IMG/VR virus record: IMGVR_UViG_3300025121_000282
Location: 124,001-188,000 of that record
Direction: 5' to 3' (one strand)
Length of the DNA stretch: 64,000 nucleotides
Below are positions 23,307 to 28,583 of this stretch, piece after piece; positions within the stretch are counted from its first letter, which is position 1; each line of letters begins with the position of its first letter. Below the pieces are notes generated by a model that searched no databases, was not told the origin of the DNA, and worked only from the letters and a program-made list of their open reading frames with translations. Made by a program: the position numbers and the translations under genes.

Positions 23307-24137
23307 ATGTCTGCAGGAGCCCATTTCCTTGCAATGGACCTTAAGCAGTTGCTTGCAACTCTTACCATCAAGGTGGGTAAGAAAATTCATGGTCACACAT
23401 CTCGGGACCACATTCTTTTGGAATGCGGTTATTCTCATGTGCGAATTGATCGTAGTGGCAGTATTCAAGCTAGGAAGGAAGGGGAAGGGGAAAGGAATAA
23501 CCTTGACCGGGTCTGTCCAGATGTGGATTTTGAAACTGCTTACGTCTGGATGGTAAGTATTCTCATTGCTGGTCGTACGGTAGAGGTTGGCCAGGGTGTT
23601 GATTACAAGTCTATTTGCGGGTGGTGGCCCAGAAGCCATGTCAACATGTCACCCAAAGAACTGGTAAGGCAAGTTGTAGACCGTGGGTGGGACCTAAATC
23701 CTGATTATCAACGAGGGCATGTGTGGACCCCAAGCCACTCTGAAAGATTCATGGGTCATTTTCTTGAGGGCAATATGGTTCCGCCCTTTTATGTGCAGCG
23801 GTGGGACTCAGAAAAGAACGCACCCCCACACCTTAAGGCTGATTACTGGGACCACGCCGAAGTGGTGGATGGCCAGCAGCGCATTCGGGCCATCACAGCT
23901 TGGCTCGATGGGAGTATCCTGGCTGAACTGAGCGACGGGCGTCGGATTGCGTACAGGGACTTTGACGAGGTGGAACGGCGATGCCTTCCTGTGTTTAGCA
24001 TTTACTTCTTTGACATTTCTCGTGCAGAGCGTCTCAAGTTCTATCTTAAACTAAACAGAGCAGGTGTTTACCACACAGACGCCGAAATCGACAAAGTCAG
24101 AAAGTTGTTGGAAAATGAAACAACAACGCGGGAATAG
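23307..24137 (+). CDS. DUF262 (GmrS/ParB-like) domain protein
   Basis: LNPDYQRGHVW, VVDGQQRI, F..LN..G motifs. Confidence 0.8.
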   Translation: MSAGAHFLAMDLKQLLATLTIKVGKKIHGHTSRDHILLECGYSHVRIDRSGSIQARKEGEGERNNLDRVCPDVDFETAYVWMVSILIAGRTVEVGQGVDYKSICGWWPRSHVNMSPKELVRQVVDRGWDLNPDYQRGHVWTPSHSERFMGHFLEGNMVPPFYVQRWDSEKNAPPHLKADYWDHAEVVDGQQRIRAITAWLDGSILAELSDGRRIAYRDFDEVERRCLPVFSIYFFDISRAERLKFYLKLNRAGVYHTDAEIDKVRKLLENETTTRE

Positions 24138-24429
24138 GAAACCTGGGTCCACAGTTTCAAATCGACTGTGGAAACTTACACCTTGTAAACCGGGTTGGCA
24201 ATCAGAATACCCCAAAGACGACGGTGGGCTGTTCACGCGATACCATACCTGGAAAAAGGTATTCGTCTGCCGGAAGTGCGACACTACAGCAAGACGTACA
24301 ACCGACTGTGCAGAGCACCCTAAGTGTCCCGGCTGCCAAACTGTGATGGAAGAATTGCCCTGGAAAGCACAAATCCGCAAGAAGGGCACCAAGAACAGAT
24401 TCGACAAACCTGAGGCAGCTTATGTATAA
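24115..24429 (+). CDS. zinc-ribbon protein
   Basis: CRKC...CPGC. Confidence 0.55.
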   Translation: MKQQRGNRKPGSTVSNRLWKLTPCKPGWQSEYPKDDGGLFTRYHTWKKVFVCRKCDTTARRTTDCAEHPKCPGCQTVMEELPWKAQIRKKGTKNRFDKPEAAYV

Positions 24430-25801: not shown

Positions 25802-26046
25802 ACTCAAGAAATCAGTATCTTTCAGAAGAAGAATGGAATCAGCTTTGGAACACAGCCGATACCTTGGTGTGCAAGGCGGGCAATTTCGAACTGCGATCCG
25901 GATGTGACATCAAAGAAAGAACCGCTGAAAACCGCCCTGTAATTCGAAAAAATAGGTGGGCCGTTTGGGACTTTTCCAGTGGTGCTGTCTATGTGTGTGC
26001 CAACGAAGAGGTGGCGCATAGGATTTTTAAGGCGTGGACCACATGA
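25798..26046 (+). CDS. hypothetical protein
   Basis: ATGA overlaps at both ends. Confidence 0.6.
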   Translation: MNSRNQYLSEEEWNQLWNTADTLVCKAGNFELRSGCDIKERTAENRPVIRKNRWAVWDFSSGAVYVCANEEVAHRIFKAWTT

Positions 26047-26088
26047 ATACTTTCACTCAGGGTGATGTCATTCGCATAGGTGGACAGA

Positions 26089-26160
26089 GTTCTCCCTGAA
26101 ATAATCACTTATTTCAGTTGATTTTTAAGCCTGGGGGACTCTAAGCTCCCCAGGAGCCGT
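26089..26160 (-). ncRNA. 3' part of the putative omega/reRNA scaffold (5' boundary unknown)
   Basis: Hairpins at 26130-26154 and 26096-26117 (CTGAAATAA/TTATTTCAG) overlapping the tnpB 3' end and finishing in GAAC. Confidence 0.5.
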
Positions 26161-27200
26161 AAGGTTCTGGATCTGATGTTTGTGGCGCCGACGAAGTCGG
26201 CGTCTTGACCGTATCCGCAGGATACGCATCTAAATCTTTCGCCTTTACGGTTCTTTTCCGACTCCTTTAAACACTTTGGACAAATACGGGAAGTATAAGC
26301 AGCTAAAACAGGCACCACTAAAACACGGTTTTCTTGGGCCTTATGTTTTAAGCGCTCATGGACTCTGCGGACCGTCCAAGGAGCCATAGCTTTTCGGAAA
26401 CCTTTATTTCTTTTAGGGTTCTTCCCTTTCTTAATCCCTTTGAGGTCCTCTATTCCGAGAACTGAAATTTGATTCCATGGAATTTTGTTTAAAATTCTCC
26501 CAATATAATTTTCCCGTTCTTTCTGGGCTCTACGGAAACCATTAGAATCAGGAACACGTCTTCTGAGTTTATCTCTTATTTGACGGAATTCGGTACCTAA
26601 ATAAGTGGGCTTAGAACCATCAGACAAAGTAAGAAGTTTGATCACTCCTGAGTCAGCACCCACAGTGGTTTCAGGGTTTGGAACCTTGAGGTCTTGATCA
26701 GGTAAGTCAACCCACACAGCCAAAGAATTTTCAGAAATCTGAATTCCCTTCCCCATTTTAGCACCAGGGACAGCCAACCATTTATTAAGAACCCTTGTTC
26801 TTCTGGTCGGGATTATAATTCGCTCGCCTTTGGCGAGCGACGATAGTTTGATTACTAAATCGAATGACTTTTCACCATTTTCAATGCCCACAACCTTTGC
26901 ATCAAAAACACAATCACCAGTGAAATGAGGTAGACTAAAGCTTTGTCCCGTCTCCGCGGCTGCTTTGCAGCCGCTTGACAAGATCGACAGAGCCTGTCTA
27001 AGTGCTATCGATTTATAGCGTTCTGTGAGTCTCGTGTTTGTTAAACGAGCTAAGGTTTCTTTGTCCAAGCCTCCCGGCTCGGACCACAAGGATTTCAAAT
27101 AAAAGTTTACACCAGCCCGATAAGCTTGAAGAAGATTGGAAATCTTCTGCTTCTTTGAAGCAGTGATAAAATCCAAGCTTACTATGGCTGCTCGTCTCAT
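26109..27200 (-). CDS. tnpB: TnpB / Cas12f-like RNA-guided endonuclease
   Basis: RuvC-I VGADSG, RuvC-II IEDL, zinc ribbon YTSRICPKC..CVSC, RuvC-III DADFVGATNI. Confidence 0.9.
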   Translation of the reverse strand: MRRAAIVSLDFITASKKQKISNLLQAYRAGVNFYLKSLWSEPGGLDKETLARLTNTRLTERYKSIALRQALSILSSGCKAAAETGQSFSLPHFTGDCVFDAKVVGIENGEKSFDLVIKLSSLAKGERIIIPTRRTRVLNKWLAVPGAKMGKGIQISENSLAVWVDLPDQDLKVPNPETTVGADSGVIKLLTLSDGSKPTYLGTEFRQIRDKLRRRVPDSNGFRRAQKERENYIGRILNKIPWNQISVLGIEDLKGIKKGKNPKRNKGFRKAMAPWTVRRVHERLKHKAQENRVLVVPVLAAYTSRICPKCLKESEKNRKGERFRCVSCGYGQDADFVGATNIRSRTLRLLGSLESPRLKNQLK

Positions 27201-27355
27201 TTGGACTTCTGATTTTCCAAATAGTCATCACAAATACGTCGAATAAGTTCTGACAAACCAATTTGTTTGGCTTCAGCTTCTTCTCGTAAAAGTTTTTCTT
27301 GATTCACTGTCAAAAGTATTTGGCATCTTCGAGTTTTTAGTGTTTTAAATTCCAT
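27197..27355 (-). CDS. CopG/ribbon-helix-helix protein (52 aa, not in ORF track)
   Basis: RRCQILLTVNQEKLLREEAEAKQIGLSELIRRICDDYL; ATGA overlap with tnpB. Confidence 0.75.
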   Translation of the reverse strand: MEFKTLKTRRCQILLTVNQEKLLREEAEAKQIGLSELIRRICDDYLENQKSK

Positions 27356-27638
27356 ACACTAAATGGTGTATAAAAGGGTTAACGATTTTGATAGAAACGA
27401 TCATTGACGAGTGTTTCTGACTATTGGAAGAACAACTGGTGAGGAGACATACACGTTTCGGAATGTATATACCAATGATGAGGTCGTTGCTGTCTGGTTC
27501 GTTCAGGACAAAGGCAGCAAACACTACAGCCTAGAGGACCTTGCCAGTGTGTCCTACGATGTTATATGTATGTCCGACAAAATGAAGGATTGACTCCACT
27601 TCTCTAGGGATGAATAACTATAGGAGGTTACAATTACA

Positions 27639-28109
27639 ATGTCTTTTGATTTTATTAATTTCGTCGTTTGCAGTGCCATTCCCGGCGACCTTATCCTGGT
27701 GGATGGTGCAGATTACCAGTACTGGGACGTGGGTGTGGACGACGAACCGTCTGGGAACATCCTCTGGCGCAACAGAGACACCGGGGACACCCTCACCCCT
27801 ACTGACATCATTGATGGTGGATGTAAGGTTGTGGTAGGGTTTCTCACCTCGCTGCTTTACGTGAATGCCTACCGGGTTTCTACTTGTTGGGGCGGACCGG
27901 AAGAGGGTGGTTGGACCTACGAGGTTGGGGAAGCCCTCGCTTCTATCCCCCTCGCTCCTGGCCAGCTGAACGGGGAGGAAATTGACCGCATCTCTTCTCA
28001 GCTTGAGGTGGCCTTGGCCTCCGAAGCTAACCGTCGTCAGGAAATCCGGGTGGTTGTCCAGCGCAAATTTGCCGAGAACTGGCCCGATGAGCGACCCTAT
28101 TATGAGTGA
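27639..28109 (+). CDS. conserved phage hypothetical protein
   Basis: YVNAY....WGGPEEGGW motif; AGGAGG SD. Confidence 0.75.
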   Translation: MSFDFINFVVCSAIPGDLILVDGADYQYWDVGVDDEPSGNILWRNRDTGDTLTPTDIIDGGCKVVVGFLTSLLYVNAYRVSTCWGGPEEGGWTYEVGEALASIPLAPGQLNGEEIDRISSQLEVALASEANRRQEIRVVVQRKFAENWPDERPYYE

Positions 28110-28115
28110 TGCCTC

Positions 28116-28583
28116 GTGGAAGATCCAATCCTCAGCTTCGAGGGGGAGTACTTTTTCCTGTCGAATTTCTACCCGAGTCTTATTGTAATTAAGGGTACGA
28201 CTTTTCCTGCCTTGGAGCATGCCTATCAGGCGATGAAGTCCACCGATGCCTCCGAGCAGCAGAAAATTGCCCGTGCGTCGACCCCTGGCAGGGCCAAAAG
28301 AATGGGGCGTCAGATTGTCCAGCTACGTCCGGAGTGGGAGTCTATTAAGATCGAGGTAATGACCCGACTAGTCAGAATCAAATTCTCAGTCCCTGAACTG
28401 AGACAAAAATTACTGGCCACCGGTGAAGCCAGACTTGAGGAAGGAAATCGGCACTACGACACTTGGTGGGGTATCCACCCGATTGGTAGTGGGAAAGGCA
28501 GGAATGAACTTGGTAGAATACTGATGCAAATCAGGAACGAAATCAGGTACAACTGCGATGAGAATAATCCAGAAGAACTGTAA
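28116..28583 (+). CDS. NADAR (YbiA-like) family protein
   Basis: FLSNFY, EHAYQA.K, AK..GR, KF...L...LL.TG...L.EGN...D..WG, G.N.LG..LM. Confidence 0.9.
   Translation: MEDPILSFEGEYFFLSNFYPSLIVIKGTTFPALEHAYQAMKSTDASEQQKIARASTPGRAKRMGRQIVQLRPEWESIKIEVMTRLVRIKFSVPELRQKLLATGEARLEEGNRHYDTWWGIHPIGSGKGRNELGRILMQIRNEIRYNCDENNPEEL

What the first reader, a model, noticed from the sequence alone, without database searches (positions are those of the whole stretch)
26043..27593. RHH+TnpB mini-element with readable ends, guide and target motif
Excising 26089-27408 restores a 76-aa host gene with no duplication, which fixes the ends to +/-1 nt. The element has no transposase. It encodes an unannotated CopG-type RHH coupled (ATGA) to a TnpB with an intact D-E-D triad. 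An ATACAC-N6-GTGTAT palindrome (27354-71) overlaps the RHH start and may be an auto-operator. The right end has only ~20 nt after the tnpB stop and ends in GAAC, as some Cas12f repeats do. The predicted guide is TCTGTCCACCTATGCGAATG and the predicted 5' TAM is ...CACTC. Inference: a compact, autoregulated homing nuclease that cuts empty alleles in co-infecting phages.
Basis: partly seen in the sequence, partly recalled or inferred. Interest (0 to 1): 0.6.

Follow-up and report, generated by a model that had tools for sequence, protein, structure and literature searches.

The report
RHH–TnpB insertion element in jumbo phage

Summary
The genes are real. tnpB (26109-27200, minus, 363 aa) has the D-E-D triad and zinc finger. 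A 52-aa ribbon-helix-helix gene (27197-27355) overlaps it by ATGA. The phage genome has no transposase.

The ends are not as claimed. A related phage carries an intact 63-aa gene at the same syntenic place. It is collinear, without gaps, with window 26043-26088 joined to 27448-27593. The element is therefore 1,359 bp (26089-27447, sliding by 3 nt), not 1,320 bp. The "76-aa host gene" is an artefact: 13 of its codons come from the left end.

About 80 relatives place the nuclease in an IS607-type clade; 41 of 79 have a serine-recombinase TnpA directly upstream. These relatives share a left junction GTCT and a right end ...AACTCT, and this element has both. The likely target motif is GTCT, not CACTC.

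A hairpin with many compensatory changes lies inside the tnpB 3' coding region, which supports a guide-RNA scaffold.

RHH+TnpB elements were described in 2026 ("Arc"). Homing between co-infecting phages and autoregulation are plausible but untested. No cleavable empty allele was found.

The parts
26043..26088 (+). N-terminal 15 codons of the interrupted 63-aa phage gene. Its ATG overlaps the stop of the upstream 82-aa gene (ATGA).
   Evidence: Collinear with L151:5763-5954 of a related phage.
26066..26085 (-). Flank that templates the predicted guide (GTCCACCTATGCGAATGACA on the tnpB strand). Its length was not determined.
Evidence: Lies directly after the conserved AACTCT end. It is the only match in the 315-kb genome.
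26086..26108 (-). Right end after the tnpB stop. It ends ...GGGAGAACTCT, and its last 3 nt (TCT, 26086-26088) are repeated at the left junction.
   Evidence: The AACTCT end is shared by nearly all of about 50 distinct homologue loci, and flanks diverge after it.
26096..26117 (-). Terminal hairpin over the tnpB stop codon (CTGAAATAA-GTGA-TTATTTCAG).
   Evidence: A comparable hairpin with different stem sequences is predicted in most of the 46 homologues.
26121..26145 (-). Conserved hairpin inside the tnpB 3' coding region (over the LGSLESP codons). It is taken as part of the guide-RNA (omega RNA) scaffold.
   Evidence: RNAalifold on 46 sequences. Six stem pairs have 15, 7, 24, 10, 1 and 7 sequences changed on both sides with the pair kept. 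The covariance model R1 finds only this copy in the genome.
26109..27200 (-). tnpB, 363 aa, an RNA-guided nuclease of an IS607-type clade.
   Evidence: 41 of 79 homologue loci have a serine-recombinase tnpA abutting it.
27197..27355 (-). 52-aa ribbon-helix-helix (Arc/CopG-like) gene, ATGA-coupled to tnpB.
   Evidence: Its closest homologue (57% identity) also sits directly upstream of a TnpB, but one from a different clade.
27354..27371 (.). Palindrome ATACAC-N6-GTGTAT over the RHH start; an operator candidate.
   Evidence: Unique in the genome, but not beyond chance for its size. The leader of the homologous RHH-TnpB in L144 has GTATAC and TGTATAA around a TTATTG-17-TATAAT promoter.
27381..27407 (-). 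Two tandem copies of TCAA-N(1-2)-ATCGTT in the left end; a second operator candidate.
   Evidence: the motif occurs only here in 314,886 bp.
27356..27444 (-). Left end (89 nt before the RHH ATG). It includes the family-type box CAGTTGTTCTTCCAATAGTCAG at 27417-27438.
   Evidence: Compared with the left ends of tnpA-bearing relatives, which read GTCT, about 14 nt, CTTGACA, then ATAGTC.
27445..27448 (-). GTCT at the left junction: the predicted target-adjacent motif. Its TCT (27445-27447) equals the last 3 nt of the right end.
   Evidence: GTCT (GTCC in a distant subgroup) lies 50-62 nt before the tnpA ATG in most relatives, and nothing is conserved before it. Homology to the related phage's intact gene resumes exactly here.
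27448..27593 (+). C-terminal 48 codons and stop of the interrupted 63-aa phage gene.
   Evidence: The 60-aa ORF at 27411-27593 is this plus 12 chance codons from the left end.

Best explanation
This is a non-autonomous IS607-family insertion element of 1,359 bp. It sits antisense in a non-essential 63-codon gene of a 315-kb groundwater phage. It entered at a GTCT site, and TCT is present at both junctions, as expected for a serine-recombinase crossover.

It keeps a family-type left end and right end. Where relatives carry tnpA, it carries a 52-aa Arc-like ribbon-helix-helix gene coupled to tnpB.

Shown here:
- the anatomy and the ends;
- family membership;
- intact catalytic and zinc-finger residues;
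- a conserved RNA hairpin with covariation in the tnpB 3' end.

Inferred:
- The tnpB transcript's 3' part is processed into a guide RNA. Its scaffold ends ...AACUCU and its guide is GUCCACCUAUGCGAAUG....
- TnpB with this RNA cuts phage genomes that have the uninterrupted site (GTCT followed by the guide match). Its own right junction (CTCT) is spared.
- Repair from an element-bearing genome copies the element in, either retaining it or homing during co-infection.
- The RHH dimer binds repeats in the left end and represses the RHH-tnpB operon, as shown experimentally for Arc proteins of IS605-family elements.
For: Ends:
- A related phage has identical gene order (145, 82, 63 and 157 aa, then NADAR) and an intact 63-aa gene.
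- That gene aligns without gaps to the two flanks once 26089-27447 is removed.
- In 9 contigs of that relative, all 6 places shown have the intact gene.

Family:
- 111 homologues were found, 45-57% identical at about 357 aa.
- tnpA (serine recombinase) abuts tnpB in 41 of 79 loci.
- The right end AACTCT and the left junction GTCT are shared.
- This mirrors CboIS607, where the motif TGGG and the scaffold end TCGG share the GG core (PMC10690162).

Nuclease.

Guide RNA: covariation, terminal hairpins, and a single copy in the genome.

RHH:
- The fold is supported.
- The homologue P0116 sits upstream of another TnpB.
- RHH-like ORFs also lie upstream of tnpB in L044 and L115.
- Arc binds and represses transposon promoters, including in arc+tnpB-only elements (bioRxiv 10.64898/2026.09.24.754181).

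Other:
- No tnpA in the phage genome.
- The element is present in every assembly of this phage, from four studies.
- The guide matches only its own flank.
Against: - No RNA data exist, so the guide RNA, its 3' end and expression are unverified.
- No cleavable empty allele was found in contigs or collections. Homing has no observed substrate.
- The related phage's site has GTTT and 6 of 20 mismatches.
- No sigma-70-type promoter was detected in the left end.
- The palindrome is not beyond chance.
- The RHH was not compared directly with the published Arc clade.
- Only two SNPs separate strains inside the element, so selection on tnpB cannot be measured.
Confidence: 0.6

Rival explanations
1. 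Fixed, inert passenger. The element inserted once by a host-supplied TnpA, lost mobility, and now only rides along. TnpB and the RHH do nothing for it or for the phage.
For: There is one copy per genome and no tnpA. It is present in all assemblies, and no empty allele is seen. A sister RHH-TnpB locus, L143, already has an in-frame stop in tnpB, which shows that such modules decay.
Against: Both ORFs, all catalytic and zinc residues, both scaffold hairpins and the conserved AACTCT end are intact. The strains are too similar to tell recent arrival from selection.
Confidence: 0.2
2. Toxin-antitoxin-like or inhibitor pair. The RHH binds TnpB and holds the nuclease in check, as proposed for archaeal RHH/MazE-TnpB pairs, rather than acting mainly on DNA.
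For: The genes are tightly coupled by ATGA. The RHH model resembles the DNA-binding domains of RHH antitoxins such as CopA, AtaR and ParD. The hypothesis is published (PMC10691335).
Against: The protein is only the 52-aa RHH core and has no C-terminal toxin-binding tail. The TnpB has the canonical DAD motif, not the D-to-H rearrangement of that archaeal clade. It has family-type transposon ends, so it is not an immobile cellular module. The one experimental study of transposon Arc proteins found promoter binding and repression.
Confidence: 0.12
3. Still a transposon. The element is mobilised in trans by an IS607 TnpA of the bacterial host. TnpB then serves the classical role of restoring the copy after excision, rather than phage-to-phage homing.
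For: The left end has a family-type ATAGTC box. The right end has GATTAT where relatives have GACTAT. TCT is matched at both junctions. Relatives with tnpA are common.
Against: There is only one copy in 315 kb. The host and its IS content are unknown. No excised form appears in any assembly.
Confidence: 0.15

Closest known systems
IS607-family elements with TnpA (serine recombinase) and TnpB, e.g. the Clostridium botulinum IStron/IS607 (PMC10690162)
   Same: The TnpB clade is one whose members mostly carry a serine-recombinase tnpA abutting tnpB. There are no inverted terminal repeats and no target duplication. The last bases of the target motif equal the last bases of the guide scaffold (TGGG/TCGG there, GTCT/CTCT here). 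The guide is templated by the flank after the right end.
   Different: This element has no tnpA and no group I intron. Its ends finish in CTCT after a GTCT site, not in GG after a G-rich site. An RHH gene sits where tnpA would be. The carrier is a phage genome.
Arc-containing IS605-family elements (Moon et al., bioRxiv 10.64898/2026.09.24.754181)
   Same: A small RHH protein is encoded inside the element next to tnpB, and arc+tnpB-only architectures exist. Repeats or palindromes lie in the promoter-proximal leader. Small arc genes are often missed by annotation.
   Different: That clade is described with Y1-type TnpA (IS605), often divergently oriented. Here the RHH is co-directional and ATGA-coupled to an IS607-type TnpB. 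Homology of this RHH to that Arc clade was not tested, and binding was not tested.
Archaeal RHH/MazE-TnpB pairs (PMC10691335)
   Same: An RHH gene lies directly upstream of tnpB.
   Different: Those are non-mobile and archaeal. They have a rearranged RuvC-III site (Asp to His) and a long 3' untranslated region. Here the triad is canonical, transposon ends are present, and 23 nt follow the stop.
ISFba1 and ISDra2 TnpB and AsCas12f (PDB 8iaz, 8h1j, 8j12)
   Same: The fold matches (Foldseek E from 1e-13 to 1e-16, query TM 0.60-0.66), as does the C-terminal RuvC/zinc-finger sequence.
   Different: Sequence identity is only 15-18%. No Rfam RNA family matches, RAGATH-18 included. The RuvC-III motif reads DADFVGATNI rather than DADxNAAxNI.
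Free-standing homing endonuclease genes of T4-like phages (Seg, Mob), and 'transposon non-restorative homing' (PMC13565253)
   Same: This is what it would work like. A nuclease gene in a phage genome would cut the allele that lacks it in a co-infecting relative and be copied in, together with flanking markers.
   Different: Recognition would be by an RNA guide plus a 4-nt motif. No homing was observed here.

Membership tests
TnpB (OMEGA RNA-guided nuclease) | RuvC D-E-D catalytic triad | tested here: met
   D183, E251 and D335 are invariant in an alignment of 30 homologues.
TnpB (OMEGA RNA-guided nuclease) | CxxC...CxxC zinc finger / TNB domain | tested here: met
   C307, C310, C325 and C328 are invariant. 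Pfam PF07282 scores 9e-15, above its cut-off.
TnpB (OMEGA RNA-guided nuclease) | TnpB/Cas12f fold | tested here: met
   AF2 pLDDT 89. Foldseek top hits are AsCas12f, ISFba1 TnpB and ISDra2 TnpB.
TnpB (OMEGA RNA-guided nuclease) | Structured guide-RNA scaffold overlapping the 3' end of tnpB and reaching the right end | tested here: met
   A hairpin with compensatory changes lies within coding sequence. A terminal hairpin occurs in most homologues. The 3' tail AACTCT is conserved. The RNA itself was not observed.
TnpB (OMEGA RNA-guided nuclease) | Guide- and motif-dependent DNA cleavage | not testable with these tools
   Needs an interference or motif-library assay.
IS607 family | Serine-recombinase TnpA in the element | tested here: not met
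   None in the element or in the whole phage genome (control positive in 13 of 14 genomes). Present in 41 of 79 relatives. This is therefore a non-autonomous derivative.
IS607 family | No inverted terminal repeats and no target duplication; the same core nucleotides at both junctions | tested here: met
   TCT lies at 26086-26088 and at 27445-27447. The empty site was inferred from the related phage.
IS607 family | Ends in GG, inserted after a G-rich motif | tested here: not met
   This whole clade ends in CTCT after GTCT. The GG rule is taken from PMC13565253.
Arc-type RHH of TnpB elements | Ribbon-helix-helix fold | tested here: met
   The AF2 model has an extended N-terminus plus two helices. 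All top Foldseek hits are RHH proteins with TM 0.7-0.8, though E-values are weak for so small a protein. Pfam hits are below cut-off.
Arc-type RHH of TnpB elements | Encoded inside the element, next to tnpB, behind the element's leader | tested here: met
   The same arrangement holds for its 57%-identical homologue in L144.
Arc-type RHH of TnpB elements | Sequence-specific binding to, and repression of, the element's promoter | not testable with these tools
   There are only candidate sites, and no sigma-70 promoter was called.
Arc-type RHH of TnpB elements | Membership of the published Arc clade by sequence | not tested
   The published Arc sequences were not retrieved.
Archaeal RHH/MazE-TnpB (toxin-antitoxin-like) | RuvC-III aspartate replaced by histidine; non-mobile | tested here: not met
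   The DAD motif is intact and transposon ends are present.
IStron | Group I intron at the left end, in sense with the interrupted gene | tested here: not met
   No Rfam intron match. The element is antisense to the host gene.

The most novel reading that the evidence does not exclude
Swapping tnpA for an Arc-like repressor may have turned an IS607 transposon into a pure RNA-guided gene drive that spreads between co-infecting jumbo phages. The footprint would be the near-identical 1.53-kb tract (26034-27563: the element plus 55 and 116 nt of flank) shared by strains. Next to that tract the strains differ by about 42% over 120 nt (25914-26033). That pattern would be a co-conversion tract from a homing event between diverged lineages.
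Probability: 0.2. Interest if true: 0.65.

Novelty: new member of a known kind. Interest (0 to 1): 0.4.

Why it matters
It gives a fully delimited natural example of an RHH+TnpB element. The left end, right end, 4-nt target motif, guide start and empty site are all fixed by comparison with relatives and with a related phage. Each prediction is directly testable: the GTCT motif, the guide GTCCACC..., self-avoidance at CTCT, and RHH binding in an 89-nt leader.

It extends the newly described Arc-TnpB association to an IS607-type clade and to a huge phage. There the published idea of non-restorative homing between co-infecting genomes could be tested.

The nuclease is compact (363 aa) with a short predicted motif, which may interest genome-editing work. 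None of this is conceptually new.

Tried and rejected
Searches that found nothing or too little:
- DNA searches of 50,697 phage records found nothing.
- A single-protein scan of IMG/VR for tnpB found nothing. The profile scan worked.
- The first search for neighbours of the 156-aa gene in IMG/VR gave only short weak hits.
- A protein search with the 60-aa ORF found only itself, because 12 of its residues are not host-gene sequence.
- Logan contigs of four runs showed no skipping joint at the element. Only contigs were available, so rare empty alleles could not be seen.
- My first pattern search for an empty site used GTGTTTCTG... as the right flank. That sequence turned out to lie inside the element, so the search was void.
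- The corrected search for target motif plus guide in IMG/VR found nothing.
- Rfam gave no credible hit.
- A sigma-70 scan found no promoter in the left end.
- A search for orphan guide scaffolds in the genome found only the element's own.

Analyses that failed or gave no verdict:
- Fixed-column pair counts for the terminal hairpin failed because of register shifts. I replaced them with per-sequence folds.
- Complex prediction of TnpB with two RHH copies gave no verdict and is not used either way.

Models considered and rejected:
- Before the related phage was found, I weighed excisions of 1319, 1320, 1322 and 1324 nt around GTCA/ACTC at 27405-27412. All are rejected: that GTCA is internal to the left end.
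- An IStron reading is rejected, because there is no intron and the element is antisense.
- An RHH that is a tnpA remnant is rejected, because it shows no similarity to tnpA and has an RHH fold.
Full report
**What the window is.** The window is bases 124001-188000 of a 314,886-bp virus record that CheckV rates complete. The same phage occurs on ENA, JGI and Logan contigs from groundwater and soil metagenomes of four studies.

**The genes.**
- On the minus strand, 26109-27200 encodes a 363-aa protein, and 27197-27355 encodes a 52-aa protein. The stop of the second overlaps the first's start as ATGA.
- The large protein hits Pfam Cas12f1-like_TNB at 9e-15 and PHROG "transposase" families.
- It has 111 homologues, mostly 45-57% identical and about 357 aa long.
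- In an alignment of 30 homologues, D183, E251, D333/D335 and the four zinc-finger cysteines are invariant.
- An AlphaFold2 model (pLDDT 89) matches AsCas12f, ISFba1 TnpB and ISDra2 TnpB. It is a TnpB with nothing visibly broken.
- The small protein has only sub-threshold Pfam hits (DUF6290, NikA-like). Its model is an extended N-terminus followed by two helices. Every top structural match is a ribbon-helix-helix protein, such as ORF56, CopA, CopG, PutA, NikA, ParG and Arc.

**Which family.**
- Profile scans fetched about 100 related loci.
- Of 79 loci with at least 200 nt upstream, 41 have an IS607-type serine-recombinase tnpA ending at or overlapping the tnpB start.
- The phage itself has no serine recombinase; the same search rings in 13 of 14 control genomes.
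- The element is present once in the genome.
- A second, unrelated TnpB-like gene (26% identity) lies outside the window.

**The right end.**
- In nearly all relatives, the 20-40 nt after the stop form a hairpin over the stop codon. They then read (C)TAACTC followed by T, and beyond that the flanks differ.
- The window has ...CTGAAATAA-GTGA-TTATTTCAG-GGAGAACTCT and then GTCCACC....

**The left end.**
- In tnpA-bearing relatives a GTCT lies 50-62 nt before the tnpA ATG. It is followed by about 14 nt, then CTTGACA and ATAGTC. Nothing is conserved before it.
- A motif that the nuclease must read has to survive excision, so GTCT is the likely target-adjacent motif.
- GTCT shares TCT with the scaffold end CTCT. 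This is the arrangement shown experimentally for an IS607 element, where TGGG and TCGG share the GG core (PMC10690162).

**The empty site.**
- The neighbouring 156-aa protein has a 68%-identical homologue. It lies on 9 contigs of a related phage with the same gene order (GmrSD_N, 99, 77, 145, 82, 63, 157 aa, then NADAR). All 6 places shown have that order, with no TnpB at this place.
- The relative's 63-aa gene (L151:5763-5954, P0122) starts with the same ATGA overlap.
- It aligns without a gap to window 26043-26088 joined to 27448-27593. The joined ORF is also 63 aa.
- Homology on the right resumes exactly at a GTCT (27445-27448, minus strand). AGA/TCT is present at both junctions (26086-26088 and 27445-27447).
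- The element is therefore 1,359 bp: 26089-27447, or equivalently 26086-27444.
- Before finding this relative I had weighed several junction models near 27405-27412. All are void.

**The guide RNA.**
- In 46 aligned 3' regions, RNAalifold finds a hairpin lying over the LGSxESP codons. Its six stem pairs have 15, 7, 24, 10, 1 and 7 sequences changed on both sides with pairing kept. Such covariation inside a coding region argues for selection on RNA structure.
- The window's copy is at 26121-26145. Its terminal hairpin (26096-26117) is a perfect 9-bp stem.
- A covariance model of the last 105 nt finds only this site in the genome, so there are no orphan guides.
- Rfam has no match.
- The predicted guide, GTCCACCTATGCGAATGACA, matches only its own flank, where it follows CTCT rather than GTCT.

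**The RHH.**
- A search of 1.8 billion representatives gave five relatives.
- The closest (57% identity, 45 aa) lies directly upstream of, and overlaps, a TnpB of a different clade (26% identity). That TnpB is intact in L144 and has an in-frame stop in L143.
- Two further loci of the window's own clade (L044 and L115) have unrelated RHH-like ORFs in the same position. The pairing therefore recurs.
- A 2026 preprint shows by ChIP-seq and reporters that such "Arc" proteins bind and repress the promoters of IS605-family elements, including arc+tnpB-only ones.
- An older proposal makes archaeal RHH-TnpB pairs toxin-antitoxin-like. That clade has a rearranged active site, which this one lacks.
- Candidate binding sites are the palindrome at 27354-27371 and a tandem TCAA-N(1-2)-ATCGTT repeat at 27381-27407. 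The palindrome is unique in the genome but expected by chance in about 19% of shuffled leaders. The tandem repeat is found nowhere else in 315 kb.
- No sigma-70 promoter was called in the left end. A jumbo phage may not use one.

**Population data.**
- All assemblies carry the element at the same site.
- Across strains the element has two SNPs: G105D and one synonymous change.
- A 120-nt patch at 25914-26033, 55 nt from the right end, is only about 58% identical between two alleles of the upstream 82-aa gene. Each allele is about as far from the related phage as from the other allele.
- This could be a co-conversion boundary or ordinary mosaicism. Similar but smaller patches occur elsewhere nearby.
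- The related phage's site reads GTTT, with 6 of 20 guide mismatches. This nuclease would probably not cut it.

**Verdict.** The genes and the general idea are right. The ends, host gene, target motif and guide start needed correction. The object is a non-autonomous IS607-type element with an Arc-like RHH and an apparently active TnpB, in a huge phage. Guided cleavage, homing and autoregulation are inferences from well-studied relatives, not observations. It is a new member of a known kind.

Noticed in passing
window 25914-26033: Two alleles of the upstream 82-aa gene coexist in the phage population, in one run at depths 18.6 and 7.9. They differ at about 42% of bases over 120 nt (75% aa identity over the protein), while the surrounding DNA is 99-100% identical. 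The patch ends 55 nt from the element's right end.
   Followed up: partly
G000:C1:92176-93597 (L003:976-2397), outside the window: There is a second TnpB-like gene: 473 aa as listed from a TTG start, 26% identical to this one, with an HAD in place of the first D of DAD. It lies tail to tail with a NADAR-family gene. The element studied here also lies two genes from a NADAR gene (28116-28583).
   Followed up: partly
L143:3001-4330 and L144:571-1894: An unrelated RHH+TnpB module has a 45-aa RHH that overlaps a 389-aa TnpB by 17 nt. Its leader is TTATTG-17-TATAAT with GTATAC motifs, and its right end finishes ...GTCTCTCT. The tnpB reading frame runs on into the flank. In L143 tnpB carries an in-frame stop.
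   Followed up: partly
L151:6467-6751: The related phage has an extra 94-aa gene between the 157-aa gene and NADAR. The window's phage lacks it. Otherwise gene order is conserved over more than 12 kb.
   Followed up: no
window about 23340-24170 (-): A GmrSD_N-domain gene (267-277 aa, with length variants among strains) lies upstream in the same conserved block. A BubE-domain gene nearby varies between 98 and 136 aa among assemblies.
   Followed up: no
window 27617-27645 (-): This is the only sigma-70-like site in the scanned region (AAGACA-17-TATAGT). It is on the tnpB strand, about 170 nt outside the left end and antisense to the start of the 156-aa gene. It is within chance expectation.
   Followed up: no
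loci L104, L107, L110-L115: A more distant subgroup of the TnpB clade (about 41% identity) ends in ...CAACCAT instead of AACTCT and has GTCC at the left junction. This suggests a different target motif. L115 of this subgroup also has an RHH-like ORF before tnpB.
   Followed up: no
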